This document shows positions 465 to 53,300 of a DNA stretch of 64,000 bases, one piece after another. Below the pieces are notes generated by a model. It had not been told where the DNA came from, made no database searches, and saw nothing but the letters and a program-made list of their open reading frames with translations. A program made the translations under genes and the position numbers. The number at the start of each line of letters is the position of its first letter. Position 1 is the first letter of the stretch. The stretch is from Azolla caroliniana (Eukaryota > Plantae > Polypodiophyta): NCBI GenBank assembly GCA_043228905.1, contig JBHGNT010000015.1, positions 14,694,001 to 14,758,000 of the forward strand, read 5' to 3'.

Positions 465-1594
465 TCTTCATGGCAGGCACCTCCCTTCATTTCATAGACT
501 TAATGACTCATTACAATATTCTAGATCGGATAGGCGTCAATTAGGGGTTAATTGATCTTGGCTAGACAGGATATATGTAGATGATTATTCTAGTGATATT
601 GGAGGAGAAGTTGGGATTATTGGGGGTTCTCTATTTTCTGACCATGCTCCGGTGCTTTTGAAGTTGGTTAGGATTTTAAAAAATAGAAAGTTTTCTACTA
701 AAATTCCTATATCCTTCTTTTCGAATGATATTTTTAGAAGTCAAGTGTTGGGTATATGGAATTATGAGATGGGGGCACAACTATCTAATGTTGCTAAGGT
801 GCAAAAGGCTTTGTATTTAATTGCTGAAATTTTTAAGGATAAAGCGTTGTTGCAATTACAAGAGGCCAAACAAAAGATGCTAGCTTCTAGGCGGACGATT
901 GTTGCTCTTCAAAAACTTCAGGAGAAGAACCCATGGCTTTGTGGGTTGGAGCTGAATTGCATTGAACACGTGCTGAGATGCAACAAATTGAGGATGTTAT
1001 AGCTCAACACAAATTTCGTGCATCCTTAGCGAAATGGTCTCATCTTGCAGATAAGGTTAATGCTGATTTTTTCGTGTAAATAAAATTGGCCGTACTAAGA
1101 ATGTAATGAGGCAATTAGAGAGGGAGGATGGATCATTAACATCGGAGGATGTTGAAATGAGGAGAATTGCCTCGGACTTTTATAAATCCTTGCTAACTAG
1201 GCAGTCATTTACACATGAGCAATCGGCCTTAAGATCTACATTATGGTGTGTTATGAAGAAAAAAGTTAATTTTTCTATGGCTAATGAATTAGTCAAACCT
1301 TTTAATGTTCATGAGGTGTATGCTACAATTACGGCCTTAGGTAAGAATGTATGTCCTAGCATCGATGGTTTTGCTCTTGAATTTTTTCTTTGCTATTGAG
1401 ATCACATTGGAATCAATGTAACGGAAGTGTTACAAGAGGTTTTTACTTTGGGTGATATGCCTTATCAATGAAATGCAAGGTAAATTTTTTTGATTCCTAA
1501 ATTAGAGGGGGTAGTAGTTGACATTAAGAAGTGGTAGTCGTTAACTATTCTAAATACTATCTACAAGATCTATGCTAAAGTCCTTGCTTTATGT
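465..1594 (+). mobile_element. L1/Tx1-type LINE ORF2, 5' part (endonuclease C-terminus and RT N-terminus), pseudogenised; continues at 6899
   Basis: Translations SWLDRIYV and FSDHAPV (APE endonuclease C-terminal motifs, about 557-655), CPSIDGF (RT domain 0) and LTILNTIYKIYAKVLAL ending at 1594; contains stops and frameshifts. Confidence 0.85.
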
Positions 1595-2212
1595 TGTCGT
1601 GAAGATTTTCGGCAACGGTGTGAAATTTGCATGAAATGTACAAAATCAAGTGTGGTTCTTCACACACAATATGAAACAATAATAGTGAAGATACTACTTT
1701 ATACTAGTTTAATATCTTGGTACAAAAAGATGGAGGTCCTCAAGAGCTTCCGAATGTACTTTACTACATTTGAAACGGACAACTAAATGTCAAGTTATGT
1801 GAATGTGAAGTTTGAGAAGAAGAAAACAAAAACAAAAACGGTGAGATATCCCACATATATAGGACAAATCAGGATCCCACAGTATATAACCAGAGCCAGA
1901 ACTTATTATTTTTTGTCTATGAGTGGAGCATAGAATGTTCTTGGGCTAAACTGTGTCTTAACTACTCATAATGGTTTTGGAGGAACCGGAACCAACGACG
2001 GAGCTAGAACCAACACCGGCACCGGATGACAACGGAGTCGGAACCGAAATGGATGGACGACGACGAAACCGAAACCGACATCGGAATCGGAATCGGAACG
2101 GATAGACCGGATCGGAAGCGGACCAGATATACGAATTGATCGGATAGGTTGATCGCGACAATTTCGTGTGAAACGAACAAAATCATCTACCTATTAAAAA
2201 TTTGTAATCAAA

Positions 2213-2285
2213 GGGATGCAACCAAGGCTTGAACCTTGCACCTCCAAGATAGGAGGCAATAAACTTACCACTAAGCCAAGTCATG
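2213..2285 (-). promoter_or_regulatory. tRNA-like A-box/B-box (Pol III type-2 promoter-like) inside element A
   Basis: Minus strand reads TGGCTTAGTGGTAAG ... GGAGGTGCAAGGTTCAAGCCTTGG, with a CAAGG/CCTTG T-arm-like hairpin. Confidence 0.6.
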
Positions 2286-2854
2286 TCTTTAGAAATATTT
2301 TTACTATGATTATAGTTTCACATGTAAACTTTCATGTTAGAGCTCGATTGAGTGACATGGTTATCATGCATCACATGTAATACATGAGTGCCATGTGGCA
2401 AACATGCATCTCATGCATGTCTTGCACCCTCATAAGCATCATATGCATGGGGGCATCTACAAAAGAATGGATGGAGAGGGAAAACGGGCTAGGTATTAAT
2501 CAAGCAAGTTTTGTACTTTATATCAAAATTAATATTAAGAAGAAAATTCGTTATCCTTTTGATGATATATCTTGTTCTTCAAATCTAAAGTCAAGAGTTC
2601 AATCTTAATCTCTCTTTCTATTTCAATAGTTCTGAATCTATTTCAAAATTGGAATCTTAATCTCAATATCTCTCTCTTAGTGGTAGTAACTTACAATATC
2701 GCAACTTAGTGGTAGTATTACCGCAGTACAAGCTCGTAAAGAAATGCGCAAGATGACACGTCGTAAGAGACAAGCATGGGAGACATCCCAATATTGGGAA
2801 CTCTACCATATGCTCATGAGTAGCGATTGTGCCACTGCATGGAAGAGATTACAG

Positions 2855-3599
2855 TGTCATGCCTTTCAGCTTCGGATCGTTGCGTGAGTCAGGTGGGAAC
2901 CACCGGGGTTTTGGACTAGGAGGAGGAAGAATTTGAGGCTAATCTAGTTATGAATATGAATATGTTGTAAGAAAGAGTTATAGCAAACTCGTGAATCCCA
3001 CAAGTGTATTGTATTAGATTAATCAATATGAATATAAGAATATAAATTTGGGTTGAAAGAGAATGATATATAATCCTCGTGAATCCCACGAGTATAGTTT
3101 ATTAATTGGTGTTTTTTAGAAACATATCCAGTTTCCAAATATTTTTCACACCCCTATTACATTGAGCTCCCCATCCTTATATGGTGATGAGAGAGTCTTA
3201 GCAATCCATGCTTTTTCTTCTCTAACTATAGACTCCATGCTTTTCCTATAGATAGACTATATGCTTTATCTAAAGTGATCATGCTTTTTCTAACTTGTGC
3301 ATTTTTTATCAACTATAGCGTTCATGCATGCTAGATGTGCATGTATAGCTTTTTCTTTTAGCATGCGTTTTCTTTTAACTAAAGTTTATCCTAGGTGAAC
3401 TAACCTTTCTATGTGGAACATCTATTTTTTAACACTAATGAAATGCTAGTGCAATGGTAAGACATTACATTATTAACATGGAGGTGCAAGGTTCGAATCT
3501 TGCCCTATGCATGTTATATATATTTTGTATTATTTATTCATATTTATTAAATTGATACTTTATAAGTTTTTCACGTAGTGTACGAAATACACTACGACA
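2855..3599 (-). mobile_element. Solo-LTR-like element B (745 bp), same family as element C (51562-52376)
   Basis: Termini TGTCATG...CTACGACA; flanks ACAG (2851-2854) and ACGG (3600-3603); removal restores the LINE frame AWKRLREPRPQ; colinear similarity to 51562-52376; TATA-like box on the minus strand near 3180. Confidence 0.85.
3445..3510 (+). promoter_or_regulatory. tRNA-like A/B-box inside element B
   Basis: TAGTGCAATGGTAAG ... GGAGGTGCAAGGTTCGAATCTTGC. Confidence 0.6.
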
Positions 3600-6276
3600 A
3601 CGGGAACCAAGACCACAAACACCCATTGAAGATCCTAAAACTTGGCACACTTATACAAAGAGACTTTACCAAATCCCAAACCAACCACCCATTCCAATGC
3701 CTTCTACACCCTGACCTACTATGGGGACACTCTTCACGACCTCTAAGGTCACGAAGGTCATAAAGAAATTACAACATAGGAAGTCCATGGACCACACAGG
3801 ATTGTGAGCAGAACACATCATATATGCAAGAGAGTGCCTAGCTCCCTTGCTAACTCTAATCTTCAATCGCGCCCTCGTAGAGGGTTTTCCACCACAATGG
3901 ACCATGAACACAGTGGCCCCCATACATAAAGGGGGGGACCCCATGAACCCAAATACTTATAGGACCATTATGATAGGTCATACCCTTGCTAAATTATATG
4001 GTGTAGTAATGGAGGCAGAGCTTAGAAATTATATGGAGCCTTCTCCATATAATGGAGGCAGACCTTAAATCTTCGTGCACCTGAACAGGCTAGCTTTAGA
4101 CGAGCCTTCTCCACTATAGATCATATCTTCACACTTAGATGCTTAATTGACCAAACTAAGGCTTGCAAGAAGAAATTATATTGTTATTTTGTGGACTTCC
4201 GCAAAGCCTTTGACACGGTCCCTAGAGAGCGGTTGTTTGATAGGCTTAAGAGCTTGAGGATATCAAATGACATGGTTTGGGCCATCTACGCACTATATGA
4301 ACAAGTGTCTGGGTGTGTTCGATGCCCAGGTGGCCTATCCAATTGTTTCACTAGCACTATTGGTGTAAAACAAGGTTGCTCCCTATTTCCAACTCTTTTT
4401 GGGATCTACATTGATGAGATCACAAATTTTATTGTTCATAAGGGAGGCAATGGAGTAGTCCTTGGGGATACGCAAGTGCGTATCTTGCTCTATGCAGACG
4501 ATATAGTTTTGCTCTCTGAATCCGAACACGGCCTACAAAGGCACCTTAATGCCTTAGATGACTTTTGCGCACAACGAGGATTGGTAGTGAATCTAGGGAA
4601 AACTAAAGTCCTTATCTTCCACACGTCGGCCCAAGTTCAAGCTAAGTGTCACCTAACTATCTCCCATAGCCCAGTTAAGGTGGTTGGATCATATGTCTAT
4701 CTCGGAGTCATTTTCAGTGCCCGCTCAGGTAAATTTTCGATGACACAAGCAACGAAGGATAGACTTACAAGAGGACATGCATCCCTCCCACTCCTCGAGA
4801 GACAATGCCACCAAGCATACTTCCAAGAGCCATGAACTAAAGGGTGGCTCTTTGACTCATTAGTGACTCTCTCTCTCTCTCTCATGTATGCATCAACGGT
4901 TTGGGCTCCAGGACTACCATCTTTCATGTGGACGCAATTAGAGAGACCATTGGTAATGATGTTATTATGCCAACTCCGAAGCAAATCGTCGGTCCCACAT
5001 GACATTATTAGGGTTGAGTTCACTCTACCCCCTATGTTAGTAGAAGCCCTTTTTCAACTTGTAGTCTTTATCCACAGGATACATAACCAACCACTTGATA
5101 GAATATCCCATCAAGCCTTTAAGGCTTCTCGAGCATTATATGAGTCCAACTATACTAGCTCATGGTATGGCATGATGGTGAGTTGGCTTCTTGCCAACGG
5201 TCTAGACATTAATAACCTCCCCCCCCTTAAGTACGACCACACGAATGATAACACTTTAATCTCTCATGAGGACCGTAATAAAGTGATACGCCAAGAAATA
5301 TGGAAAGTTTATACTCGGTACATATGGATCACCCCACTAGAGCCACTCCTATCTAAAATGTAGTACTATAAGGAACACTTTATGCACTTCTCTAAGTTAG
5401 GTTTTATCACACGACCAAGATATCTAGATGTATTCTTACCACATGCACTAAGGGTTGCCATTGGTCAACTTAGAATATCATCTCACCAACTTGAGATTGA
5501 GAATGGACGTACTAATGGAGACCCTAGGGAGGAAAGGATATGTAGGTTATGCCACATAGAGATAGAGGATGAGTACCATTTTACATGCAAATGCCCCACC
5601 TATGCCGAGATAAGGGCAAAATACCAAGACATACTTGGTTCCTCTCCCACCCTCCCTAAACTATTAGATACACTAGATATAAAGAAATTAGGTAGATACA
5701 TCTTAGAATTGAAACAACACAGAGAGAATAAGTTACAAAACGTTGATAATAATGTTGCTAATGTTTACCAACATGTAACAAATGAAGTTTTTCAGGAACT
5801 GGGGGAGACAATGAATGTCGACACACCTGCACCACTCGAGCTTTTCCTTGATGAAGCATCAAAGCAACTCGACGAGATGTAGAAGCAATAAAGAAAATAA
5901 GGGAACGTGAACTACACCACCTAGAAGCCATGGCTAGGGCACTCTATGCATCGGGACCATGGGTCACACCCACACCAAAAACTTTTGACCTCCCACTTCT
6001 TTTTGAGAGACTTGGGTGGAAATGAGATTAGGCTTAGTGCAAAGTTTTGTACACTACTAGAACTCTCTTAGCTTAAGCTATTTTCTTTTATTTTAGTTTT
6101 GAGGATTGGATAAACACTCATTTTTGTTGTAAACCAATTGTCTCATGGGCCAAATTTGGCCTTAGAAGATGTTAATATATCTTTCTTTCTTTCTTTCTCA
6201 ATCTATCTTAAATCCTTTCTCGTTAAAGCTAGTGCGTACTTCGAGTCCTTCCGGTCCAGAACGTCGGCGGTTCCAC

Positions 6277-6854
6277 TATCATGATGATTTTCGGCTACGG
6301 TGTGAAACCGAGTGAGACAAATAAACCAAGGATGTGCAACATTGCACATGCACTTAGCAAATAAGCCCAAGGCTTAGTGGCACTTGAGTTCATACAAAGG
6401 GGTGCAATCAAGGTTTGAACCTTGCACCTTTAAGATACAAGATGTTTGCCTTACCACTAGGACAACTATCATATAGTGTAAATTTTATGTATTTCCTTTT
6501 CATATACGAATTATAGACAAAATAAACATAGAAAACCATGTGAACAAAACCATGGTTCTAAACCCATGGTTTTGTGCATGAAGAGAGCTATAAAAACCCT
6601 AGTGGAGCTTGTGTAAAGGGGGGCTCAATATGTGATATCACCAACACCATTATCATCAATATAATTATATTCGTCTTTATCTTCTTCATATTTTTCTACT
6701 TCTCAAGTGTACAATCTTTCTTCTTCTCAAGTGAACAAATTTCATCCAATCTTACATTGATCGTCATCTCTTCGATAATTCCGCGAACGTCCTCCCTAGT
6801 CCAAGACCCCGGTGGTCGCTTGAGTAGCACACGCACGCGTGAATCTTCACGACA
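6277..6854 (+). mobile_element. Solo-LTR-like element D (578 bp), nested 40 bp from the right end of element A
   Basis: Left end TATCATGATGATTTTCGGCTACGGTGTGAAA is a decayed copy of A's left end; right end ATCTTCACGACA; flanks CCAC (6273-6276) and CCGC (6855-6858); TATAAAA at about 6589; minus-strand tRNA-like motif at 6399-6467. Confidence 0.8.
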
Positions 6855-6898
6855 CCGCCTCACAATCCGCACATAGTGACGGATCTTCACGACAATGT

Positions 6899-9647
6899 AT
6901 GCAACCTTTACTAAATGATATATTATTCATAAATCACAAACGGGTTTTATGCAAGAGCGTTCTATTTTTTATAATTGTTTCATGTTCTGGGAACTTACAA
7001 CTTTGGCAAAAGAGAATGATGTTGACCTAGTGGTGCTATTATTGGACTTTGAAAAGGCATACGATAGAGTTGATTGGTCTTTCCTCGAGGAAGTTATGTT
7101 ACAACTAGGATTTCCAATGGCTTGGGTAATTGCGGTAAGAGCCTTGTATAAGAATGTGTCTAGTTCTGTATATGTGGCGGGAGAAGTTGATGCTCCCTTC
7201 TCTATTTCAAGGTCGGTAAGGCAAGGATGCCCATTGGCCCCTTTCCTATGCTTATTAATAGCTGAGGCTTTTCATGTGTATTTTAATAATCATGCCTTAA
7301 GGATAAAAGGATTGCAATGGGGAGTCGATAATAAGCAAGTGCTTGATAATGAATTTGTTGATGATACAACTTTATATGTGGATGGGGAGGAACAGAATTT
7401 GCGTAATGTTCAATGTGTGATACAAGAATTTTGTGAGCTATCAGGAGTTATTATAAATTGGAATAAATCCATTGGAATAAGAATGAAGAATAATAGAGTT
7501 TCACATTGGTTGCCGCATCCGGATTTTCAATGGCTTCAACATGGGAGGTCAATACGATATCTTGGTTGTCAAATTGGTGTTGATATTACTCATGATCAAC
7601 TTATTGCCCCCTTATTGATGTCATTGAAGAGGAAATTGTTGTTTTGGTCTTCAAGACATCTATCGTTGGCTGGAAGAATTGTAATTGCTAATCAAGTGCT
7701 TCTGTCTTCGATGTGGTATATCCTCTCATCTTGGTTGTTTTCAAGATCAGTTCTCTCTCAGATACAAAGCCTTGTCCGCAAATTCTTATGGGGTGCATCT
7801 GATGCAAATACAAGATCTAAAGTTGCATGGAAGGTAATAATATCTCCTCCTCATGAGGGAGGATTAGGGTTGATAGACCCAATGTTTCAATGTAGAGCAT
7901 TACTTGGAAAATTTGTTGTGAGAAGTATGTTGTTAGGGAATGAGCCATGGAAATTGTTACTTCATGAACTTATGAAGGAATTGGTTCCATGTAGAGGTGG
8001 ACATTGGAAGAGAAATGTGAGGTGGTGGTTTGTGCATGAGGATATGCCTTTGACTTCTATTTTTACTTCGGATAAATTTTTTAACTCTTTGTTAAGAGCT
8101 TGGAAATGTTTGTTGCCTAATCTTGTGCATAAACATCCTATATGGGAGGACGAGTGGAAAAGGAAACCAATTTGTTGGAACCCCTTGATTAAGGATGATT
8201 ATGGTAATATGTTAGGAAGAAGGACAAGATTAAATTGGGCAGCGGTTGATGAGGCCTTTACGGCTAATCTTGGTACTTGGTTAAACTTTAATCAATCCTC
8301 TAGGGATGTTAAGGAACAAGTTTTGAAATCAATAAGAGGTGGTACTTTAATGTTCCAAGAGATAAGTTATGCTTGTAATAGGATTTTGCCCTCTTCTTTT
8401 AATTCAAACCATGTATGGTACGAGGCATTCTCTTCTTTTAATGTCTTGATTGGAGTAAGAGCTTATACATCTAATGAATCCTTCTTAGCATATATAATAG
8501 TTTCAGAGGGTAAATTGCAATGGGTCTCTATGGAGGATGACCTTCTCAATTTAGTGGAGTGGAAACCTATTAGGGTGGTTGCAAAAATAGGGAAGGTATG
8601 TATTATTGATCCCCATCCTAAAAAAGTAAACCCTTTTTGGGATATTTGGGTTTGTGATAGTAAACTCTTATTGGAGTTAGAGTGGGATCCAACGGAATAG
8701 TGGTGGAGAGATGTTAATGGTAAGATGGTTTCTTTCTTTGAATAATCTGTAAAATTAGGTAGGGAATTCCAACGACGGAGGACTCTAGTTATGTCAGTTG
8801 CATCTAAGGTATGGTTAAATAATAATATGCCTATGCATTCAGTATTGGCATTTTGGAAATGGTTGTGAGCTCTACAAATTCCTCGCAAAATCATTACATT
8901 TAGATGGTTGTGTGTCCACTATGCACTTCCAGTCCTAGAATGGATGCATAGGGAAGAGGGAACCAAAACTTGCTCTTTTTGTGGGCTTCACTTGGAATCA
9001 ATGCAACATGCCTTATGGAACTGTATGGTTGCATGTTCTGTTTGGAAACGTATGTTGCGTCTCATTGATGTTGCATATGGACCTAATGTGATTGCATGGG
9101 GAAATGTCTTTTGGATGGACGTAAATGTGGATAAACATAATTATGAAAGGGAAAAGATATTGTTTACCCTTCAAACTAGGGGAAGGCAAGTTAAGGACAT
9201 ACCATACTCAAGCCCAAATCGGTTGAATGGGCTACGATATCATCTATGGTTCTATGGAATATTTGGATAGGTCAATGCCAAAATGTGTTTTAGCAAATAA
9301 AGCAAAATCATGTTCATTGTGTGAAGGAAATTTGGCCGATGCTTATCTCAATTCTAAAAGGTCAATATAACTCTTTCACAAGTAATGAAGATATGATTTT
9401 TCTGAAACAACAATCCTTTAAAGGCAAATGGAAGGATTTGTTAGTTTTTGTGGAGAGAAATGACAAAATGGAATGGCAATACGTACCCCCGCGATGGTTG
9501 TTCCCTCCATAGGTGGAGGTTGGTTCTAATTAGGACATAATGGGGGATATCTTACCCCCCACTAAATTGTATCATTATAGGCTTGTATTTGCTTATTGCA
9601 TTGGTAATAGAAACTATGGTGTAGTTTTAAAAAAATAAAATAAAAAT
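6899..9647 (+). mobile_element. L1/Tx1-type LINE ORF2, 3' part (RT, zf-RVT, A-rich tail)
   Basis: ORF 6949-8700 with LDFEKAYDRV, VRQGCPLAP, FVDDTT, IRYLG and GGLGL; CSFC...ESMQHALWNC zinc finger; A-rich tail at about 9628-9647. Confidence 0.9.
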
Positions 9648-18023: not shown

Positions 18024-18169
18024 GATTACTTCCTTTTTTTTCTTCTCTGATGATTCCTGTTGCGATGTTATTTGCACTTAACAGTCTTACAGACACACAC
18101 ACAGATTTCTCACCACAGACACAGACATAGAAACAGAGAGGCATGAAAAGCCATCATCGAAAAGACAAC

Positions 18170-18485
18170 ATCAAATTTCAAATTTCAAAATCCAAAAATC
18201 CAAAAATCCAAAATCAAATATCAATTATCGGAAATTGGAAAACAAAAAGTACAAATTGACCAAAATCTTAAAATCCAAAAATCCAAAATCAAAATCAAGA
18301 ATCAAGAATCAAGAATCAAGAATCAAATATCAATTATCGGAAACTGGAAAATAAAAAGTACAAATTGGAAAAATAGAAAATAGAAAATCAAAATCCAAAA
18401 TCCAAAATCCAAAATCCAAAATTGGAAATTGGAAAATAAAAACTACAAATTGGAAAAATAAAAAATAGAAAATCAATATCAATCC
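18170..18485. repeat. A-rich low-complexity repeat (AAAATCC / AAGAATC units)
   Basis: Seen directly in the sequence. Confidence 0.8.
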
Positions 18486-21265: not shown

Positions 21266-21269
21266 TGAC

Positions 21270-29964: not shown

Positions 29965-32571
29965 TGTCGCGGAATTATGGGTGTGTGCGCGAAACAAAGG
30001 CGGAACCATAGAGGCCTCAGACCAAGGAGCACAAGAAGAGAAAGAAGAGAAACGACACACGATTATCAACAAGATAGGTACCAATGATTAATTAGGGAAA
30101 CAAAGTAATTACAACCGGCTCAACTGGGGCTGACCTACAAGCTTTGCGAACAACGCACACACCCACACACCAAGATACCACAGGGAGCCTCTGACGGGAG
30201 CACACGGGCTTCCTACGCGGGCAGAGGCGTCCGTGCTAACAAAAACAAAGTAGAGAGCAGAGAGCGGGTGCTCGGTTCCCAGTCCGACAACACTCTCCCT
30301 AAATGTGCGATCCCCCAACTAAGTCCTCTCTCCCTCCTTTTATAGATCAAGGAGAGAGAGGGTTGTTACATCAAGTAGTCAATCTCTACCATTTCAAACA
30401 GAGATTCGCCTAGATTTATTCATGTGTTTAATTCGTCCTATTAAAGTTTGCTACATCATGCCGACCTAGCCTAGTCCTAGGTTATTTACAAGCATAATTT
30501 ATAATTTGCGTGCATCCGTGCACGATGCAGTTCACACGCCTATGGTCTCCGTTTCTTCTTGTAGCCACTTTTCCCCACTACATCCACCCCCACCAAACCG
30601 CACGTCCACCGGTATGTGTCGAGAGACAAAAATATATATATATGGGGAAGAGCCGGCCATTTATCACTCGTCGTCCTTTGATTCGTCGACCTTCCTGCAT
30701 GCGTTTGCTCTTTCCGAGCTGTCATTCTCGTCTTCGCAACCTGAGTCCTAATCGTCCTTGTACCTTTTCTTGAATGCCTTGATCTGTTTTCTCGCAACTG
30801 GTACCGCCATCTGTGTTCTGCCGAGCTCCGCCTCCTTGCGAATTTCCACGTTGCCTTATGTTGGTTGTCGAAGATGCTGTTGTAAACCAACATCCAGTCA
30901 CATTCCTCGATCTTCTTCGGTCTCAGCCTGTGTGTACGGTCGAACCAGTCCTTGTTCTTCTTCCACGTCGCGTACAATTTCGCCTTTGCCCGTTCCACGT
31001 TCTCCGGCCTCCGCTCGAGCTAGCAAATCCATGCCGCGAATAGCTCCTCCTGGCTCATTTCGTTCACCTAGTCGATTGCCGCCCACGAAGAGATCGTCCG
31101 CTCCATTGACATGATCGGCTTCTGCCTGTACATAAGCTCTGCTGGCATAAACCCGGTCATCGAACTGTGCGTGGTTCGGTCCACCCACAATGCGTAAGGT
31201 AGGAGCCGTGGCCAATTCCCGACTTGCCCCTCGCACGCCCGTACTAACACCTTCACGATCGGCCCGTGTCAGCGTTCCACCTTTCTGTTCGCCTCTGGAT
31301 TGTACGTCGTAGTGAGAGAGAGTTTTACCCCCAACTGGCCGAACAACTCTTCGGCTTCCTGCACATCCAGTTCTCCCCGGTCGGCCACGATCTTCCCCAT
31401 GTATCCGTCTCGGCAAACCACCTCTTCGATTAGGAACCGGCATACGGCCGTGATCGTTTTGTTCTACAGTGCACGGCCGTACACTTGGTTTGTTAGGTCC
31501 TCCTGCACAAACACCAGGTACCGCATTTGCCCCTCTCCCATCGGCATCGTCACTAAGTACACTATCCATTTGAAATGGACGGTCGACGGGTAGGTCGGGT
31601 GCAACTCATCTCTGTGCCGGTTCACGGAATTCATCTGGCAACTTTTGCAAGTCTCACAAATTGATGCGCATCCTGGCACATTCCTGGCCACCAGTATTTT
31701 TCCTTTAGCTTTTCGAATGTGGCCCACATTTCGCGGTGACCGGTCCAAGGGATCTTGTGGTACGCTGACAACAACACCTTCTGCTCTTCCCTTCTTATCA
31801 TTACTCGGACCGGAATGCCGTTATGCTTCTTCGGATGCCTCCATATACTCCCATTCCGCAGGAAGAACCGATACGCCTTCTTCTTGATCCTGTTCGCCTC
31901 ATCCCTCGTCCATGCCGCATCCGACGCCAATGTCCTTAAGAATCTACCTATCTGGAGCCACTCCCCATCGTACTCATTTTCGTTAAACTCATTCAGTCCT
32001 GGAGTGCTCCCCTCTCCTGCTGCTATGCGAGCCGACTCGAAGAAGTCCACGCCGACTTCGTCGTCCTCCGACACCATGCCATCCTCGTTGTCAAACCGCG
32101 TCTTGAAAGCATATCGGCCGTGGCATTGTCTTTATTGGAGATGTGTTGGATCTTCGGGTTTAGGGACTTGATGTACGTGATCCACCTAAGCATAGCTAGG
32201 TCTAGAGTCACGCATCCGGAAACCATACCTAGGATAGGTAGGCAGTCTGTCTCGATTACTACCTCTGTCCCGACCAAATAATCTTTGTCGTCCTTGACTA
32301 CTGAAACGATACCCCAAAGTTCGCGTTTAACCTAGGTGTACTCTCGCTGCCGCTAGCTTAATACTTTCGCTCCGAATCAGATGGGGAGCCTTACGCCGTC
32401 TTTGTCTTCCTGATTGACCACCCATCCAATTCCGGTCGGGTTTGTGTCCACGGTCACGTAAACTGGGCTACCCTTTTTGTAAACCGCTTTCCGGAGGGCC
32501 GGTGCCGTAGCAAGCACCTCCTTCAGCCTTCGGACCGACACCGTGTGATCTTTGTTCCATTCGAATTTGCG
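29965..32571 (-). mobile_element. Ty3/gypsy element E, 3' half (3' LTR 30582-29965, PPT, integrase, RNase H), degraded
   Basis: Minus strand: PPT GGGGGTGGA then LTR TGTAGT...TTCCGCGACA; RNase H region FGAKVL...KRELWGIV...VIETDCLP; integrase GHRE...YWWPGM...CKSCQ; left flank ACGT. Confidence 0.8.
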
Positions 32572-36000: not shown

Positions 36001-38339
36001 CCGAAGAAGATGAAAATGATACCGGAACCGGCCCCGATCCCGAAATGGATTCGGATGAAGAAGAATCGGAAGAACCGGTTACCGAAGCTCCGAAACGGAG
36101 ATATCCTCTAAGAGAGAGAAGGGCCCCCCGGAGATTTCCGGAACCAGAGCACGTGCTGCTAACCGACGAGGGGGAGCCGGAGAGCTTTGAAGAAGCAAAG
36201 CACGACACCCAGAGCCGCAGGTGGTTGAGTGCCATGCAGGACGAGATGGATTCCCTGCATGAGAACCACACATATGAACTTGTGGAGTTGCCGAAAGGAA
36301 AGCGGGCACTTCGTAACAAGTGGGTGTTCAAGCTGAAACCGGGAGATGCCGGAAACCCCCCGAGATACAAAGCCAGGATCGTGGTGAAGGGGTTTCAGCA
36401 GAAGAAGGGCGTCGACTTCGACGAGATATTTGCCCCGGTAGTGAAGATGACCTCCATCCGGACGGTGCTGAGCATAGCGGCAAGCATGGACCTCGAGGTA
36501 GAACAGATGGACGTGAAGACGGCATTCCTTCACGGTGACCTCGATGAAGAGATCTACATGCAGCAACCGGAAGGATTCGAGAAGAAAGGGAAGGAGCACC
36601 TGGTATGCCGGTTGAAGAAGAGCCTTTACGGACTGAAGCAGGCTCCCCGGCAATGGTACCGGAAGTTCGACTCCTTCATGACCGACGAAGGGTACCTCAA
36701 AACGCAGTCCGACCACTGCGTGTTTGTGAAGAAGTTCGAAGGAGGAGACTTTCTAATACTCCTCCTGTACGTGGACGACATGTTGATCGTCGGACGGGAC
36801 CAGGTCAAGATACGGATGCTGAAGAAGGCTCTTCACCGAACCTTCTCAATGAAGGACTTGGGTCCGGCGAGACAAATACTAGGGATGCACATCATCCGGG
36901 ACCGGAGCAAGATGCAGTTGTGGCTGTCACAGGAGAAGTACGTGACAAAGGTGCTTAAACGGTTCAACATGTCGGAAGCAAGACCGGTCGGATCGACCCT
37001 CCCGGCAAACTGCAAGCTGTCCAGCAAGCAAAGTCCCAAGACAAAGGCTGAAAAGGAGGATATGATGAAAGTGCCGTATGCCTCAGCCGTCGGGAGCTTG
37101 ATGTACGCCATGGTGTGTACGAGACCGGACATCGGATATGCAGTCGGAGTGGTGAGCCGGTACATGAGCAATCCCGGCAAAGAGCATTGGAACGCGGCCA
37201 AGTGGATACTCCGATACCTGAAGGGCACGGCAAACGTGTGCCTCCGATTCGGCTCCGGTAAGCCCGAACTCGACGGCTTCACCGATTCAGATATGTCGGC
37301 TGATGCAGATACCAGCCGGTCCACATCAGGGTATGTGATGACGTATGCAGGGGGAGCCGTTTCGTGGCAGTCGAGGCTGCAGAAGACGGTTGCGTTGTCA
37401 ACCACGGAGGCGGAGTACATGGCGGCTGTTGAAGCCGGCAAGGAAATAATATGGATGAGGGACTTCATTAGAGAGCTCGGTATCCGGCAGGAGGAGTACC
37501 GACTCTACTGCGACAGACAGAGTGCAATCCACCTTGCGAAGAACGCGGCCTATCACTCCCGGACGAAGCATATCCAGCGAAGATATCACTTGATCCGGGA
37601 AAGGATAGAAGACAAGGAGTTCGTGCTGACGAAGGTCCACACTGACGAGAACGGGTCGGATATGCTGACCAAGGTGCTCACACCCGACAAGCTGGAAGCA
37701 TGCCGGAAGAGGATCGGATTGGAGAGACATCCCATGCCGAAGTGAAGGGGGAGTTTGTTGGGATTACGGTCCCTTCGGATGGGATGGTCGGATGTCGGAG
37801 ATGAATGCCGACAAGCCCGGTTTCGGTTTCGGAACCGGATGATGAAGACCCCGGCTTCGGAGCCGGATGACGAATGTACCCGGAGAGAGATCCGGATGCG
37901 GGGACATATCCGTGAATATGTTTGCCAAGGGCCCCTGAGGCTATAGTTGTAAATAGCCCCAAAGTCATATGTGTATAAATATGACTTAGGGCAAACAGTT
38001 TTAATGTTGCTACTCATTTTTCTGTTTTGCCACTCAAGAGGAGTGAAGAGAGAGCAGCCGTGAGAGAGAGAGAGATAGAGCGTGAGAGAGGAAGAGGTGG
38101 ACGCCTCTGTGTATTTCCGCCGCCTGTGGCGAGGACAGCGAGCTCAAGGTCGTCGCCTTGCAGCTCGCCATTGTATACTTCTCTGTGCATAGTATTGGTT
38201 CGGAGTCTTGTACTCCCGTGGTTTTTTTCCCGTACAGGGTTTTCCACGTTAAATCGTGTGTCCGCTTATTTCCCATTTTCTGCAACAACGATTCGTGTGT
38301 TTCCTTGGTTGTGGCCGAGAAGTGACGATTATTGCTCTT
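33056..38339 (+). mobile_element. Intact young Ty1/copia (Tnt1/Tork-like) retrotransposon; LTRs 33056-33641 and 37756-38339
   Basis: LTRs differ at one internal base plus the terminal CA missing from the 3' LTR; PBS TGGTATCAGAGC (tRNA-iMet) at 33645; PPT GAAGGGGGAG at 37744-37753. Confidence 0.97.
33672..37745 (+). CDS. Copia gag-pol polyprotein, 1357 aa, uninterrupted
   Basis: Zinc knuckle CFHCGKPGHFRKNC; protease VVDSGAS; integrase HKRLCH...CTDC, HTDV, ADNGGE, AERMNRT; RT QMDVKTAFLHG, SLYGLKQ, YVDD; RNase H DSD...TEAEY...SDMLTK. Confidence 0.97.
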   Translation: MEGGGSGQPGMMVLNAQNYADWKIKMEDLLIVRDLYEPIDKSEIPKGVLESEWRLLNRKAVATIRQYVDVSVLQHVANDTNAYEMWRKLSGLYERKNALNRTSLMRKIVNLKYRDGESMVEHVSTFMGFVNQLAAIKFPLEDAMQAIILMCTLPESWENLVVTLSTSCTEDNLSLQTVKTSILNEEARRRDKEPASDPKMLLTESDRGRQWNRSPQRREKSGTRSQSRGRPTCFHCGKPGHFRKNCRHYRKDNGADDTDSKKSPERNGAYRGATDRRGPDRRGQDRKGTTALAASEEEIMLITEEGELNIAGDETTWVVDSGASFHLTPERRYFSSYTAGEHGCVRMGNEGTCRIAGIGDVWLTTPTGCKMLLKDVRHVPEVRLNLISAGRLDDEGYTGSIRNGVMKFSKGSLIVARARKVNTLYLMNAWLCPEELNVAADTAGELWHKRLCHMSEKGMKRLAEDNLIPVKHVHLEKCTDCLAGKQNRTSFHSRPPTRRSAPLELVHTDVCQVETKSHGGAQYFVTFIDDHSRKLWTAPLKTKDQVLCVFKELHARVERESGKKLKAIRADNGGEYWGQFQEYCRSKGIRLEFTVPKTPELNGLAERMNRTIMERVRSMLAHAELPKGFWAEAMSTATYVINKSPSVPLDGDTPQRVWTGREVSYRHLKVFGCLAYVHVAKDRRGKLDPKTRPCIFLGYGDDEFGYRVWDPVDKKIFRSRDIIFMEDKTLADWESEKKMKSSKSTGEDQLYEEQSRPARDRLALEDPAEDGEETEPAEEDENDTGTGPDPEMDSDEEESEEPVTEAPKRRYPLRERRAPRRFPEPEHVLLTDEGEPESFEEAKHDTQSRRWLSAMQDEMDSLHENHTYELVELPKGKRALRNKWVFKLKPGDAGNPPRYKARIVVKGFQQKKGVDFDEIFAPVVKMTSIRTVLSIAASMDLEVEQMDVKTAFLHGDLDEEIYMQQPEGFEKKGKEHLVCRLKKSLYGLKQAPRQWYRKFDSFMTDEGYLKTQSDHCVFVKKFEGGDFLILLLYVDDMLIVGRDQVKIRMLKKALHRTFSMKDLGPARQILGMHIIRDRSKMQLWLSQEKYVTKVLKRFNMSEARPVGSTLPANCKLSSKQSPKTKAEKEDMMKVPYASAVGSLMYAMVCTRPDIGYAVGVVSRYMSNPGKEHWNAAKWILRYLKGTANVCLRFGSGKPELDGFTDSDMSADADTSRSTSGYVMTYAGGAVSWQSRLQKTVALSTTEAEYMAAVEAGKEIIWMRDFIRELGIRQEEYRLYCDRQSAIHLAKNAAYHSRTKHIQRRYHLIRERIEDKEFVLTKVHTDENGSDMLTKVLTPDKLEACRKRIGLERHPMPK

Positions 38340-38499
38340 ACCGTGTGATCTTTGTTCCATTCGAATTTGCGGTGTGTGGGACATTAAAGTACCTGTCTCA
38401 ATCACCCAACCTAGTACTTTATTAGTCCTATAATATTTACCTACATTTGTACATAAAGACATTTTTGTGTGCATCCGTGCACACCCCCGTTCACGCGCA

Positions 38500-39830
38500 T
38501 CCAACTCTATTTCCTTCTGCTGGCTGGAATCCTTCACAAAAATAGGGTTCTTGGCCAACTACACGCTACTGATGTTGTCACAATAAATTGGAATCGGAAT
38601 GGTAACTTCGACCCATAAGTCCTGCAACGATCGTCGAAGCCATATAGCCTCACAAGTTGTGATGGTGGCGCCTCGATACTCAACTTCAGTGCTTTACAAG
38701 GCCAGTATTGGCTACTTCTTGCAACTCCAGGCTACAACTGCGTTCCCAAGAGAGAACATGAAGCCTGATGTTGACCGTCGATCCGTGGCATCTCCGGCCC
38801 AACTGACATCAGTATAGCCGACTAGTTGTTTGGCTATGTCATGCCACTACAAAAGTCCCCGATTCTTCGTGCCGCTTACATATCACAATATTCAATGTCG
38901 CACTGAAGGTATGCGACTATCGATCTCTACATGAACTGACTTATCACACCAACCGGATACTAGCTAAGATCGGGTCGGGCGATGGTTAGATAGATTAGGC
39001 TTCCGACGATTTGTCAGAACCGTTTCTCATCGCAAGCCACTCCCGAGTAAGGACAAAGATTCAGGTTTCTGTCGAGAGGAGTGGAGATGGATCGGCAATC
39101 CGTCATACCGAATATGTATAGCATAATGTGAGTGAGTGAGTGAGCAATATGCCATCAGGGGTGTGGATCACTTTGATCCCGAAGAAGTAATGAAGCTACC
39201 CTAAATCCTTCATCTCGAATGCATCCGACAATTGGGACTTGACTTGGTTAATCTCAGCAAGGTTGGGGCCAGTGATGACCAGGTCCTCCACATACAACAA
39301 TATGCACACTGGACCCTTCGAACCTTTCCGAATGAACAAAGAAGTGTTGGATTTTGATACCTCAAACCCCATCTTTGGCAACCGTTGCGTGATTTTGGAG
39401 TTCCAAACTCAAGGGGCTTGCTTGAGGCCATAAAGCGACTTCCTTAGCCTACATACTTCCCACTTGTTCAACTCCGACTGAAAACAGGGGATTGGACCAT
39501 AAATGCATGTTCTTCAAGGTCGCCTTGAAGAAACACGTTCTTAACGTCCATCTGGTGGAGATGCCACCCCCTTGCCGTTGCGACTGCAAGCATCACATGG
39601 ATTGTCGTCATCTTTGCCACCGATGCGAAGGTCTCATTGTAGTTGATGTTGTGGGTCTACACATATCCTTTGGCCACCAATCGGACCTTGTACCGGTTGA
39701 CCGAACCGTTGACATTGTACTTTATCTTGTACACCCACTTGCAACCGATTGGTTTGCAATGTTGGGGAGGGTCAACCAAGTCCCATGTTTTCTTGGCATC
39801 AAGTGCCTGTATTTATTCCTCCATGGTTGA
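38500..39830 (-). mobile_element. Degraded copia RT/RNase H remnant (RNase H part also duplicated at about 32700-33055)
   Basis: Minus strand: TWDLVDPP, VNRYKVRLVAKGY, ILLYVEDL, FEMKDLG, GYTDVSWAGD. Confidence 0.8.
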
Positions 39831-48607: not shown

Positions 48608-48843
48608 CTATGTACTATATAAACCCCTTATGGGGCATGTAATGAGATATAGAATTTTCCCTCTCATTTTGTGTTTCATTATTTCTCTTTCCCTTTCTCT
48701 TTCACTCCCCCACCCATTAACATTGGCACGCTTGGTGGGGCAGACCTTCCCTTAAGAAGAAGTCTCTCACCCTCCCTCTCCATCACTAATCTCTCTCACT
48801 CTCTCTATGTGTATGTAACCCTTTCCTTTCCTTTTCCTTTCAG

Positions 48844-49150: not shown

Positions 49151-49169
49151 TTTCCATTTTCCTAACAAA

Positions 49170-49868
49170 CAACCATCTTGCTTGCACAGGACGCAAGGCA
49201 ATATAAGACTCTGCTCGTTGCCTACTCCCACACCGGAAAATCCTTGTGTGCCGTTTGGGCACCACTTCATTCGCTCCTTCCACATAACTCTAATATCCAT
49301 GGCCGAGTAGATACCGGTGCATCTTGTATGCCCAAGATGCGTAGTTGCTCCTGTCAAGCTTCTCTGTTGGAAGCGAGCTAGCCATTCCTCTGTCCATTTT
49401 TTCTTTTCATCTATTCTTAACTGGGATTTAGGGTTTGTCTGTTTGGAACGCTTGTTGGAAGCAGAGGATTCTCAATCCTCGTGCTCTAATACCATGTAAA
49501 GATTAATATGCGGAAGCTGAAACAGTCACAACCTATTCCGCTGGACAACAAAAGAAAAACAACACAGTGAAGACAATGGAGAGACAAAGAGAGTACACGG
49601 GAGACACAGAGAGAGCAGAAGACTGAAGAAAATTCAATTCAAATTATAACAATTTCTACATACGAATGTGCTCAATGAGCACTTTTATACAAATCCATAA
49701 AGGATGGTTAGAAGTACTAACAGGTACTTCAATGTTCATAAAGCAGCTATTGACACTAACTCCTATTAGACTGGGGACTGGGATCGTAATGTTATGCTAG
49801 CTCACACGGATCCGGCTCACCGATCGATCTTCATCCGATCTGGCCCATATTGAGCTTGCTTCTTAACA
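49170..49868 (-). mobile_element. Truncated copia 5' end (LTR about 49868-49495, PBS, gag start), related to the 50302-56760 element
   Basis: GCTCTAATACCA (PBS on the minus strand) next to an LTR TGTAAAG...CTTAACA; gag start MASSLPTEKLDRSNYASW. Confidence 0.75.
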
Positions 49869-50301
49869 ATGTTGTTACAAGGTGTGCCTTATGTACAGTA
49901 TTGACATTTCAATATATTATGGAGGCTACAATTTAACAATGTTGTTATACCACGTAAGGTTCGCATGGGTGTATGTTCAGTTTGTGCAAGTTTAAAAAGT
50001 ATGGCAAAATGTAGGAAATTTGATGACGAAATAAAAAATTACAAGTTCCCTGTTGAAAGATCATTGTGAGAGTCAAGCATTGGAACATTCTAAAGTTATG
50101 CCAAAGGATATTGGAGATGAATGCCTTGTGTAGATACATTTAGTTGGTTGTTTGTGGTACTCCCAGGAAATAAAGCCACAAGTATACTTAGCCTATCCTA
50201 ATATTCACAATGACCCTAATGTTACAGTCATAGTCATGCAAAGAGTGTTACAATCTTGGCAAAGGATACTCCCACCTATTCTATATCTGTAACTTGACAA
50301 C

Positions 50302-53300
50302 TGTAAAAAGAATAGTGTGCGGAAGCAATAGGAAACCGAACACAGAAAATACGCAGGTTTAATGGAGAGCTTGTATATGCACAGTACAAGGGAGAGACAG
50401 AGAGAGAGAGCACACAGAAATTCAATTCAAAATAATACTCAATCTGTACATACACCGTGCTCAGTGAGCACCTTTTATACAAACCCTGACAATAGGGCTG
50501 ACACAAGTACTAACAGTACTTGACCGCTCATAAATGAGCCTACTACACTAACTCCCAAAATTATTCCTTACGGGGAATATCTTCCCAACGGCCTCGCGGT
50601 TTTCATACCGATACGGCCATGTTATGCGTACCGATTTATGCACCCAGTCTACGCATTGGGTTATGCATCGTGTTACGCACAAATGTTGAGCTTGTCTCTC
50701 AAAACTGCCCCTCAAGCTCAACTTGAGATTCCACCTGCTCCATCGGATCTATGCTCCGGTTCCTTCTGGCTTCACGCCTCACTCGTGCTCCTCGACCCTT
50801 CCGGTCGGCTTGTCGGCTTACACGGCCCTTCTCAGCTTCCTGGGTGTTGCGGTGTTGGCGCCTCTTCTGTTGCCTTCTCTTCCGCTTGGCCCTCGGTTGA
50901 CTCAGCGTATCCGAATCAAACATCTGAACCGACTCGACTTCCTCCGATCAGTTTTTGCTTTCATCTGAGTTGGTTATCTCCAACTCGTCTTCGATCTTCT
51001 CACCCTTGGTTGGCTTCGGCTCTTTCTTTCGACTGCTCCCCTTATGTCCGCTTTCGGAATCTTCCACGGGTCCGCCCTCGGCTTCTTCAACCGATCCGAA
51101 ATCGAATTCGTCATCCGACTCGGCGTCGCGGTCTTCGTCTTCCGGAACTTCTCTCCCTCTTCCGTGGTCATTCGGGACGTCTCTCCCCCTCAAGTTCGGC
51201 ATGCCGAGGTGACGCAACCCAAGCGCACATGAGAATTGTCGCAACTTGTCCAGACCATGTCGGCGGTCTGCCGATCCGTCGAAACATACTGAAGTTCGAC
51301 TTCACTGGAGAGGACACGCTCACAGACGAAATGGTAGTGCACCTCAATGTGCTTAGTCCGAGCGTGGAAGACGGGGTTCTTTGCTAGCTAGATGCTACTG
51401 AGGTTGTCGCAGTAGATTGTCGTTGGATCGGATACCTCTATCTGTAGATCCTTAAGAAGCCGCTTCAACCATATGGCTTCGCATGTCGCGACAGCCACTC
51501 CTCTATACTCAACTTCGGTGCTTGACATCGCAATTGTCGGCTGCTTCTTGCTACTCCACGTTGTCGTGCCTTTTGGCACCAGATCGTTGCGTGAGTCGGG
51601 TGGGAACCGCTTGGGTTTTGGACTAGGAAGAGGAAGAATTTGAGACAAGTTTATAGTTATGGATAGATTATTAGAAAGAGAGATAGAAATCTTGTGAATC
51701 CCACGAGTGTATTGTATTCAATTAATCAATATTTAGATAAGAATATGTATTTAGATTGAAAGAAAGAGATTAAAAAGAATTTGTGAATCCCACAAGTATA
51801 GATTATTTCGTGAATCCCATGAATATAGTTTGTTAATTGGTGTTTTAAGAAATATATCCAATTTCCAAATAATCCACACTCCTATTACATTGTGCTCCTC
51901 ATCTTATATAGTGATGAGAGAGTCTTAACAATCCATGCTTTTTCTATAGATAGACTCTATGCTTTTTCTAAAGTGATCCTACTTTTTCTAATTTGATGCG
52001 TTTTTATCGATTTTGGTGTTCATGCACACTACATGTGCATGCGTAGCTTTTTCTTTTATTATGCGTTTTCTTCTAACTAAAGTTTATCCTAGCGTGAACT
52101 TATCTTTCTATGTGGGACGTTTACTTTTTTAACACTAATGATATGTTAGTGTAATGGTAAGGCTTAACATTATAAACATGGAGGTACAGGGTTCGAATCC
52201 TACCCTATGCATGTAACAATCTTTTCTTTTATTTACAAATTTGTCTCTTCATCCGGTCCTCTTCTCACCAACTCTCACCGGCCTTCTTCATCCGGTTCTC
52301 ACCGGGTACTCTTCATGTCCCATTCGGAGAGACAAAAAATGTGTTTTTCACATTGTGTGCGAATTACACTACAACAACGCGATCGCGACACTCCCAAGAG
52401 AGAACGCGAAACTGGACGTGGATCGGCGATCGCCAGCGTTTCCAGCCCAATCAGCATCGGTGTAACCGACCAACTGTGCAGCAGTATCGGGCCGATATAG
52501 TAGCCCCCGGTCCTTAGTGCCACTGACGTACCGAAGTACGCGTTGTGCGCACTGAAGGTGCTCCTCGGTCGGTCGCACCATGAACTGACTAATCACCCCG
52601 ACCGGGTAGCTAAGATCTGGTCAGGTGATGGTCAAGTATATAAGGCTTCCGACTATTTGTCGGAACCTCGTCGGGTCGTATACCTTTCCGGATTCGGAGC
52701 GAAGCTTGACGGTTCTATCCAGAGGAGTCGAGACGGACTTACAGTCGACCATCCCGAACTTGAAGAGCATATTCAACGCGTAATGACGTTGGTTGATCAA
52801 TATGCCTTCGGGGGTACGGATCACTTCGATCCCGAGGAAGTAATGAAGGTCCCCCAGATCCTTCATGTTGAATGATGCCGCGAGCTGGAGCTTTACACGG
52901 TCAATTTCCTCAAGGTCGGCGCCGGTGATGACCAAGTCATCAACATAAAGTAAAATACTAACCGGTCGAGTCAACCTTTCCGGATGAATAGTGAGGAGTC
53001 TGATTTTGATGTCGCAAAGTCCATCCGACGCAATCGTTGCATGATCTTCGCATTCCAGGCACGCGGGGCTTGCTTGAGTCCGTAAAGGAACTTCTTCAAC
53101 CGGCACACCGCCGAGGCATTCGTTCCAGAGTGAAATCTGGGGGGTTGTACCATGTACACCTGTTCCTCAAGCTCACCTTGCAGGAACGCATTCTTTACAT
53201 CCATCTGATGTAAGTGCCACCCCTTAGCCATTGCTACGGCTAGTAGAACACGCACAGTAGTCATCTTCGTGACAGGTGCGAAAGTCTCGTCGTAGTCGAT

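What the first reader, a model, noticed from the sequence alone, without database searches (positions are those of the whole stretch)
1591..52380. LTR-element family that appears to target CpG-centred 4-bp sites (NCGN) inside older transposons
Seen: five independent TGT...ACA insertions. A (1595-6894) TSD ATGT/ATGT; B (2855-3599) ACAG/ACGG; D (6277-6854) CCAC/CCGC; C (51562-52376) ACGT/ACGC; gypsy E (29965) single surviving flank ACGT. Host reading frames favour ACGG for B (L-R codons TTA CGG) and are compatible with ACGC for C (I-A-W). For A, L1 proteins usually have Arg at that codon, implying ancestral ACGT. Every deviation is a C>T or G>A change. All five targets are other TEs, and CG is scarce in the AT-rich LINE targets. 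The copia elements here have ordinary 5-bp TSDs with no such bias. Inference: an integrase or tethering domain that selects CpG, possibly methyl-CpG, steering insertions into silenced TE DNA and away from genes. E still has an integrase and is the candidate autonomous relative. The sample size is only 5.
Basis: partly seen in the sequence, partly recalled or inferred. Interest (0 to 1): 0.85.

Follow-up and report, generated by a model that had tools for sequence, protein, structure and literature searches.

The report
Phygy-type retrotransposon LTRs inserting at CpG
The five insertions are real copies (four solo LTRs and one truncated element) of a bryophyte Ty3/gypsy lineage that makes 4-bp duplications centred on CG, but this NCGN preference was already published for the Phygy lineage in 2019.

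Summary
All five insertions and their flanks are in the sequence as described. Host reading frames and paralogues show that the duplications are exactly 4 bp. A, B, C and D are solo LTRs. E is a 5'-truncated element that keeps RNase H, integrase, the polypurine tract (PPT) and a 3' LTR. A is not a 5.3-kb element. It is a solo LTR of about 1.2 kb that later received a LINE, B and D.

External contigs link these LTR types to E-like gag-pol elements of about 8-9 kb. These have a tRNA-Trp primer binding site (PBS) and no chromodomain. I collected 20 independent insertions: 5 in the window, 8 on metagenome contigs and 7 in the liverwort Riccia sorocarpa. Eighteen have CG at the centre of the 4-bp site. 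The other two have TG in both copies. Background CG is 3-8% (binomial P below 1e-17).

So the CpG-centred target is real. However, 4-bp TSD, NCGN, tRNA-Trp PBS and about 8.6 kb are the published signature of the non-chromovirus Phygy lineage (Neumann et al. 2019). The methyl-CpG idea and the idea of steering into silenced TEs are untested. Neither is needed to explain nesting in a TE-saturated window. Small additions from this work are a consensus nearer (A/C)CG(T/G), often ACGT, and the same behaviour in a liverwort.

The parts
1595..6894 (+). A: solo LTR (about 1.2 kb of its own sequence: 1595-~2682, ~6187-6276, 6855-6894) with later nested insertions. TSD ATGT at 1591-1594 and 6895-6898, inside an L1-type LINE.
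   Evidence: Exact 12-bp inverted termini. The first 42 bp match, at 88%, the LTR start that follows the PPT of E-like elements L014-L017. Conserved LTR-end module. No PBS or PPT inside. Host ORF phase.
2683..6186 (+). 5'-truncated LINE nested in A (approximate ends). It is the host of B.
   Evidence: RVT_1 at 4191-4835. LINE-type ORFs. Candidate 11-13 bp TSD at both junctions.
2855..3599 (-). B: solo LTR. TSD on the window + strand is ACAG (2851-2854) / ACGG (3600-3603), which is CCGT/CTGT in element orientation.
   Evidence: 77% identity to C. 72-80% identity to LTRs on ENA contigs, including the 3' LTR of L007 that follows an intact pol. Host frame.
6277..6854 (+). D: solo LTR nested 40 bp from the end of A. 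TSD CCAC (6273-6276) / CCGC (6855-6858).
   Evidence: Its start resembles A's start. Its last 67 bp are 80% identical to the 5' LTR end of L010-L012, which is followed by a tRNA-Trp PBS. Alignment A3 supports a single ancestral CCGC.
51562..52376 (-). C: solo LTR inside the RNase H region of a minus-strand copia (50302-56763). TSD on the + strand is ACGT (51558-51561) / ACGC (52377-52380).
   Evidence: 93% identity to L004.
29965..32550 (-). E: 5'-truncated Phygy-type element. It comprises the 3' LTR (29965-30583), the PPT (about 30584-30620), and degenerate integrase and RNase H (30828-32550). The surviving 3' flank is ACGT (29961-29964).
   Evidence: Integrase_H2C2. Frames with stops. 75% nucleotide identity to L001 and 69% to L010/L014 pol. 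PPT and LTR start fixed by alignment to L001 and by the PPT search.
351..440 (+). F: doubtful sixth LTR start (TGTCATGAAGAG) with flank CGAT. Not counted.
   Evidence: Matches 10 of 12 terminal bases but lacks the conserved 33-bp LTR-start module. No BLAST similarity to any LTR.

Best explanation
A-D are solo LTRs and E is a truncated copy of several related families of one non-chromovirus Ty3/gypsy lineage of bryophytes. By every structural criterion I could test, this is the Phygy lineage.

Structure of the full elements: LTR (0.4-1.9 kb), tRNA-Trp PBS, gag (DUF4100), PR-RT-RH-IN, G-rich PPT, LTR.

Proposed mechanism: the integrase joins the two LTR ends (TGTCGTG... and ...CGACA) to target strands 4 bp apart. 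It strongly prefers sites whose two central bases are CG, with consensus about (A/C)CG(T/G) and often the palindrome ACGT. Because the CG sits at one exact position on the dyad of the staggered cut, the most likely mechanism is direct, two-fold symmetric read-out of the target DNA by the integrase in the target-capture complex. TG/CA is tolerated at low frequency. This last step is inferred, not shown. After insertion, the duplicated CpGs decay by C>T or G>A, which explains most TSD mismatches.
For: LTR identity and structure:
- On L007, an intact 913-aa RT-RH-IN ORF is followed by the PPT and a B/C-type LTR.
- The PBS is complementary to the tRNA-Trp 3' end, 4-5 nt after the LTR, in L002, L010-L012, L014-L015 and L021. 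I recognised the tRNA-Trp sequence from memory.
- L010 has a 1.5-kb LTR plus 5.75 kb internal, about 8.8 kb in all. L021 is 7.9 kb with LTRs 97% identical.
- Pfam finds no chromodomain.
- The window holds no PBS and only E's PPT, so A-D are solo LTRs.

Target sites:
- There are 9 complete TSD pairs, all 4 bp: 4 identical and 5 matching at 3 of 4 positions.
- 18 of 20 insertions are centred on CG. P is 3e-18 even with an 8% background, and 6e-13 against the share of CG among pyrimidine-purine (YR) steps.
- The outer half-site base counts are A 32, C 19, G 6, T 1.

Literature: Phygy is described with 186 elements, 4-bp TSD in 100%, NCGN, 8628 bp average length and tRNA-Trp PBS in 81%.

The closest solved structure by sequence is PFV integrase, which also makes 4-bp TSDs (the TSD length is from memory), followed by Ty3.
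Against: - I could not place the pol in a REXdb or GyDB tree, so membership rests on structural signatures and host group.
- Two sites (A and L006) have TG in both copies, so either the preference is not absolute or both copies decayed in parallel.
- Direct read-out by the integrase is inferred only from the base-pair precision of the CG position. No residue was identified.
- The species of the window is unknown. The named relatives are from Riccia, not Physcomitrium.
- Seven of the 20 sites are from Riccia and eight from metagenome contigs of unknown, probably related, bryophytes.
Confidence: 0.85

Rival explanations
1. One reading: the integrase, or a tethering module, recognises methylated CpG. 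New copies are therefore steered into silenced TE DNA and away from genes.
For: All window insertions whose host could be identified lie in TEs. TSD mismatches are mostly CpG-decay transitions, so these sites became methylated at some time. Nesting of Phygy in other TEs is reported in P. patens (PMC6911290).
Against: - No methylation data are available.
- The decay happened after insertion and says nothing about the empty site.
- The pol has no methyl-binding or extra domain, only an acidic C-terminal tail.
- NCGN occurs about every 32 bp, so the motif alone gives no regional targeting.
- The window is almost entirely TE, so nesting is the null expectation.
- A chromatin tether sets regional preference, not the position of a dinucleotide within the staggered cut.
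Confidence: 0.1
2. The preference is only for a flexible pyrimidine-purine step at the centre of a 4-bp stagger, as described for spumavirus integrase. On this view CG is not specifically selected.
For: All 20 central dinucleotides are YR steps (CG, or TG in A and L006). PFV integrase is the closest solved relative. The PFV preference for a central YR step is from memory.
Against: Among YR steps, CG makes up only 13-16% of the local background, and TA, TG and CA are each about twice as common. Even so, CG is seen in 18 of 20 sites and TA in none (P about 6e-13).
Confidence: 0.04
3. The short elements are non-autonomous DNA transposons of the Ginger type (integrase-like transposase, TG..CA termini, 4-bp TSD), or TRIM/Helenus-type elements with a tRNA-derived promoter.
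For: 6-13 bp terminal inverted repeats and a 4-bp TSD. A block with a tRNA T-arm-like motif in every LTR. Ginger1 has a 4-bp TSD and TG..CA ends (PMC6839031).
Against: The same sequences occur as the 5' and 3' LTRs of gag-pol elements with a PBS and a PPT. The units contain no internal LTR pair. The tRNA-like block is not recognised by ARAGORN or Rfam. Ginger elements are not reported in plants.
Confidence: 0.01

Closest known systems
Phygy lineage (Ty3/gypsy, non-chromovirus) of Physcomitrella patens, Neumann et al. 2019, Mob DNA 10:1 (REXdb)
   Same: 4-bp TSD, NCGN target motif, tRNA-Trp PBS, about 8-9 kb, polyprotein filling the internal region, no chromodomain, bryophyte host, frequent nesting in other TEs.
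   Different: No defining feature differs. Here the outer positions are also biased ((A/C)CG(T/G), often ACGT), and the same behaviour is seen in the liverwort Riccia sorocarpa. The lineage was first described as specific to P. patens, although it was later annotated in the liverwort Apopellia. Phylogenetic placement was not tested.
Selgy lineage (Selaginella moellendorffii non-chromovirus gypsy)
   Same: 4-bp TSD, short non-chromovirus element.
   Different: About 5 kb, tRNA-Ala PBS, no target motif reported. The elements here are 8-9 kb, have a tRNA-Trp PBS and use NCGN.
Prototype foamy virus integrase (PDB 3OYM, 3L2Q and others) and the Ty3 intasome (7Q5B)
   Same: Closest solved integrases by sequence (E 6e-20 and 1e-16). 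From memory, PFV also makes a 4-bp TSD with a weakly palindromic target and a preferred central YR step.
   Different: PFV shows no strong CG requirement (from memory). Ty3 is positioned by TFIIIB and makes 5-bp TSDs (from memory).
Ginger1 DNA transposons (Bao et al. 2010)
   Same: Gypsy-like integrase, TG..CA termini, 4-bp TSD. A CCGG-centred target, from memory.
   Different: Cut-and-paste elements with TIRs and no RT, PBS or PPT. Not reported in plants. The elements here are LTR retrotransposons.
Helenus / TRIMp3 (Kojima 2024) and Cassandra
   Same: An LTR carrying a small-RNA-like block.
   Different: Helenus elements are non-coding TRIMs of 1.3 kb or less. The only plant case has 5-bp TSDs. 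Here the elements are autonomous, and the block is not recognisable as a tRNA.

Membership tests
Phygy (non-chromovirus Ty3/gypsy) | Ty3/gypsy domain order RT-RH-IN with no chromodomain | tested here: met
   Pfam on the L007 and L010 pol finds RVT_1, RT_RNaseH, Integrase_H2C2 and rve, with no chromo domain. gag carries DUF4100. E has RH followed by IN on the minus strand.
Phygy (non-chromovirus Ty3/gypsy) | 4-bp target site duplication | tested here: met
   9 of 9 complete pairs are 4 bp. Host ORF phase confirms this for A and B, and a paralogue for C.
Phygy (non-chromovirus Ty3/gypsy) | NCGN target motif | tested here: met
   18 of 20 insertions. The remaining two are NTGN in both copies.
Phygy (non-chromovirus Ty3/gypsy) | PBS complementary to tRNA-Trp | tested here: met
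   TGGTGAACCCGACGTG lies 4-5 nt after the 5' LTR in L002, L010-L012 and L014-L015, and TGGTGAACTCGACATG in L021. The window copies have no PBS because they are solo or truncated. The identity of the tRNA is from my memory of the plant tRNA-Trp 3' end.
Phygy (non-chromovirus Ty3/gypsy) | Element length about 7.7-10 kb, with the internal region almost all coding | tested here: met
   L010 is about 8.8 kb (inferred from one full LTR plus the internal region). L021 is 7.9 kb with both LTRs.
Phygy (non-chromovirus Ty3/gypsy) | Placement of RT, RH and IN inside the Phygy clade of REXdb | not testable with these tools
   No Phygy reference sequences were retrievable. The nearest named proteins are unclassified Riccia proteins.
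Helenus / TRIMp3 | Non-coding TRIM with two short LTRs that each contain a tRNA-derived pol III promoter | tested here: not met
   The LTRs belong to 8-9 kb coding elements. The block is not detected as a tRNA. Only A's copy passes ARAGORN at an 80% threshold.
Ginger1 DNA transposon | TIR-bounded cut-and-paste element with an integrase-like transposase and no RT, PBS or PPT | tested here: not met
   The same terminal sequences abut a PPT and a PBS of RT-encoding elements.
Retrozyme | Hammerhead ribozyme in each LTR | tested here: not met
   No Rfam family reached threshold in the window, and nothing at E<=1 in 1-7000.

The most novel reading that the evidence does not exclude
The integrase of this old bryophyte lineage (moss-like and liverwort hosts) reads a CpG, and possibly its methylation state, directly at the dyad of the strand-transfer site. 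This would make it a natural retroelement integrase specific for a sequence, and perhaps for an epigenetic mark. The consensus would be ACGT or CCGG rather than plain NCGN.
Probability: 0.12. Interest if true: 0.7.

Novelty: already known. Interest (0 to 1): 0.2.

Why it matters
The finding is a correct rediscovery, from five copies read by eye, of a published property: Phygy elements integrate at NCGN with 4-bp duplications. Its practical value is for annotation. A-D should be annotated as Phygy-type solo LTRs, and A should not be called a 5-kb element.

The open question is mechanistic and remains worthwhile. Few LTR-retrotransposon integrases show a base-pair-exact sequence requirement. This one appears to be conserved between moss-like and liverwort hosts. 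It is therefore a tractable model for how an intasome reads target bases, and for whether cytosine methylation matters.

Tried and rejected
1. I first took B and C as plus-strand elements and the tRNA-like block as sense. The L007 pol ORF showed the opposite orientation.
2. I first doubted D's TSD, because B and C read GGTGGG at the homologous place. A nine-sequence alignment of LTR ends showed that a single CCGC fits the closer relatives E, L010 and L014.
3. The 'flanks' AATG and CTTG of L003 and L002 looked like non-CG targets. They are in fact the spacer before the PBS.
4. I first guessed the LTR end of L019 from a terminal motif, which gave flank AGGC. Comparison with L023 and L024 moved the end to 15832, with flank CCGC.
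5. Two scans of viral contigs found nothing.
6. A look-up of an ORF lying inside the L010 LTR returned only the same contig.
7. tRNA, ribozyme and other RNA searches: ARAGORN and Rfam were negative.
8. Species identification failed. The SWI3-like exon has an 88% match only to an unnamed ENA protein. Short-fragment searches with E's integrase piece gave only metagenome fragments.
9. F (position 351) was rejected as a countable sixth copy.
10. The Riccia loci L018 and L023 lack a 5' LTR. Their 3' ends were fixed from the terminal inverted repeat (L018, less secure) or from a second copy (L023).


Full report
**What is in the window.**
The sequence is AT-rich, plant-like and almost entirely transposable elements.
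- B (2855-3599) and C (51562-52376) are 77% identical over about 700 bp.
- A and D share their first 30 bp or so, a 70-bp internal block, and the exact 12-mer TGTCGTGAAGAT. This 12-mer occurs only at 1595(+), 6854(-) and 6894(-).

**The duplications are 4 bp.**
- A: the host L1 reverse-transcriptase frame ends on a complete codon at 1594 and resumes with base 6895 as a third codon position.
- B: the host LINE frame behaves in the same way.
- C: the host is the RNase H region of a minus-strand copia. With one 4-mer removed, the peptide has the same length as its paralogue at 32840-32960. The conserved Ala-Trp favours ACGC as the original + strand site.
- D: I first suspected that there was no duplication. 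An alignment of nine LTR ends then showed that a single CCGC restores the conserved module seen in E, L010 and L014.
- One copia (50302-56763) has a clean 5-bp TSD, ACAAC.

**What A really is.**
Positions of about 2683-6186 inside A are a 5'-truncated LINE with its own RVT_1 domain and a C-terminal zinc knuckle. B sits inside that LINE, and D sits 40 bp from A's end. The window contains no tRNA-Trp PBS and only one PPT, which belongs to E. A, B, C and D are therefore solo LTRs. A has about 1.2 kb of its own sequence.

**The link to E and to autonomous elements.**
E (29965-32550, minus strand) keeps a degenerate RNase H and integrase. One metagenome scan with a block conserved between B and C returned eight ENA contigs that carry B/C-type copies at 72-93% identity.
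- On L007, an intact 913-aa RT-RH-IN ORF that is clearly E-like ends at a G-rich PPT and runs straight into a B/C-type LTR. This fixed the true orientation: B, C and E are minus-strand, and A and D are plus-strand.
- Look-ups of homologous pol proteins gave contigs with gag (DUF4100) and pol followed by the PPT and an LTR start that matches A's first 42 bp at 88% (L014-L017).
- Other contigs have a 5' LTR end 80% identical to the end of D, followed 5 nt later by a PBS complementary to the tRNA-Trp 3' end (L010-L012).
- E's pol is 75% identical in nucleotides to L001 and 69% to L010 and L014. Its PPT and LTR start align with theirs.
- All families share a module of about 33 bp at the LTR start and a ..CGACA end.
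- Element sizes are about 8.8 kb for L010 and 7.9 kb for L021. Pfam shows no chromodomain or other extra domain.

**Target sites.**
I collected every insertion whose boundary could be fixed, either by a PPT or PBS on the inner side or by a second LTR copy. All sites are given in element orientation.

| Source | Insertion | Site(s) |
|---|---|---|
| Window | A | ATGT/ATGT |
| Window | B | CCGT/CTGT |
| Window | C | GCGT/ACGT |
| Window | D | CCAC/CCGC |
| Window | E | -/ACGT |
| ENA contigs | L003 | ACGT |
| ENA contigs | L005 | ACGT/ACAT |
| ENA contigs | L006 | ATGG/ATGG |
| ENA contigs | L007 | ACGT |
| ENA contigs | L009 | ACGG |
| ENA contigs | L010 | CCGT |
| ENA contigs | L011 | ACGG |
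| ENA contigs | L022 | ACGT |
| Riccia sorocarpa chromosomes | L021 | CCGT/CCGT |
| Riccia sorocarpa chromosomes | second LTR in L021 | GCGG/ACGG |
| Riccia sorocarpa chromosomes | L024 | CCGG/CCGG |
| Riccia sorocarpa chromosomes | LTR end in L024 | ACGT |
| Riccia sorocarpa chromosomes | L023 | CCGT |
| Riccia sorocarpa chromosomes | L019 | CCGC |
| Riccia sorocarpa chromosomes | L018 | GCGA |

The ENA sites come, and the Riccia sites.
- Eighteen of 20 sites have central CG. The two exceptions have TG in both copies.
- The CG dinucleotide frequency is 3.1-3.7% in these sequences and at most 7.9% in any host element.
- The binomial probability is 3e-18 at an 8% background.
- It is 6e-13 against the share of CG among pyrimidine-purine steps, which argues against a mere flexibility preference.
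- The outer positions are also biased: the half-site base 5' of the C is A 32, C 19, G 6, T 1. The consensus is therefore about (A/C)CG(T/G), with ACGT the commonest single site.
- Four of the five TSD mismatches are C>T or G>A changes inside the CpG. C's mismatch is at an outer position.

**Comparison with what is known.**
Neumann et al. 2019 describe the non-chromovirus lineage Phygy from Physcomitrella patens. They report 186 elements, a 4-bp TSD in 100%, '(NCGN)', a mean length of 8628 bp and a tRNA-Trp PBS in 81%. [quoted passage not shown] Jedlicka et al. 2019 report the 4-bp TSD and frequent nesting of Phygy in other elements. Phygy has since been annotated in a liverwort. Every structural criterion I could test is met here. 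Phylogenetic placement against REXdb could not be done, because no reference sequences were retrievable. The named relatives of the pol are Riccia proteins at 55-65% identity. The species of the window could not be identified.

**Mechanism.**
What is shown: the staggered cut is 4 bp, and the CG occupies its two central positions. What is inferred: because the position is exact to the base pair and the consensus is palindromic, the simplest mechanism is symmetric direct read-out by the integrase in the target-capture complex. The closest solved integrase by sequence is that of prototype foamy virus. From memory, it also makes 4-bp duplications and bends the target at the central step. A chromatin or methyl-CpG tether is not excluded as an additional layer, but nothing here speaks for it. 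There is no extra domain, there are no methylation data, and NCGN occurs about every 32 bp. The two TG/TG sites suggest that the requirement is strong but not absolute. Parallel decay of both copies is possible but less parsimonious.

**Verdict.**
It is wrong about A's structure, and it is unsupported on methylation and on steering away from genes. The phenomenon is already published for Phygy, so novelty is low. The modest additions are the (A/C)CG(T/G) refinement, the conservation in Riccia, and the LTR-terminal modules.

Noticed in passing
window 2209-2279, 3425-3500, 6395-6465, 52135-52210; L010 about 740-810: A conserved block of about 70 bp with a tRNA T-arm-like core (GGTTCGAATC) lies in U3 of the A, B, C and D LTRs, antisense to the element. 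In the L010/L011 LTR it lies in the opposite orientation. It is not recognised as a tRNA by ARAGORN or Rfam. It may be a relic of a tRNA-derived SINE or a captured module.
   Followed up: partly
window 32540-38856: A young copia (33056-38339; LTRs 584 bp and 99.8% identical; PBS TGGTATCAGAGC) is flanked by a 517-bp direct duplication of host copia sequence (32540-33056 = 38340-38856, 99.4%). It has no 5-bp TSD, and its 3' LTR lacks the terminal CA. This suggests a recombination or assembly event rather than a simple integration.
   Followed up: partly
window 351-440: A sequence starting TGTCATGAAGAG interrupts a gypsy PR/RT-like ORF (33-350) and is followed by another T-arm-like motif. It resembles the A/D LTR terminus only over 12 bp, and its flank is CGAT. 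Its status is unresolved.
   Followed up: partly
window 23980-24849: A SWIRM plus Myb/SANT exon (SWI3-like chromatin remodeller subunit) is the only clear host-gene fragment seen. Its best database relative is an unnamed metagenome protein at 88% identity, and named plant proteins reach at most 38%.
   Followed up: partly
window 27521-29505: Two direct repeats of about 0.7 kb, 91-92% identical and 1.3 kb apart, lie next to E's 3' flank. Their ORFs have no Pfam hit, so the nature of the DNA that E inserted into is unknown.
   Followed up: no
L013 1-15654; L001 1-4210: L013 shows pol-LTR-gag-pol-LTR-gag, that is, tandem elements sharing LTRs. L001 shows two E-like elements tail to tail within 650 bp. 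Either could be a real nested or tandem array, or an artefact of metagenome assembly.
   Followed up: no
window 17039-17305, 18158-18474, 61088-61873, 62824-63212: Several short tandem-repeat arrays (units of about 52, 110 and 120 bp, plus T-rich simple repeats) unrelated to the finding.
   Followed up: no
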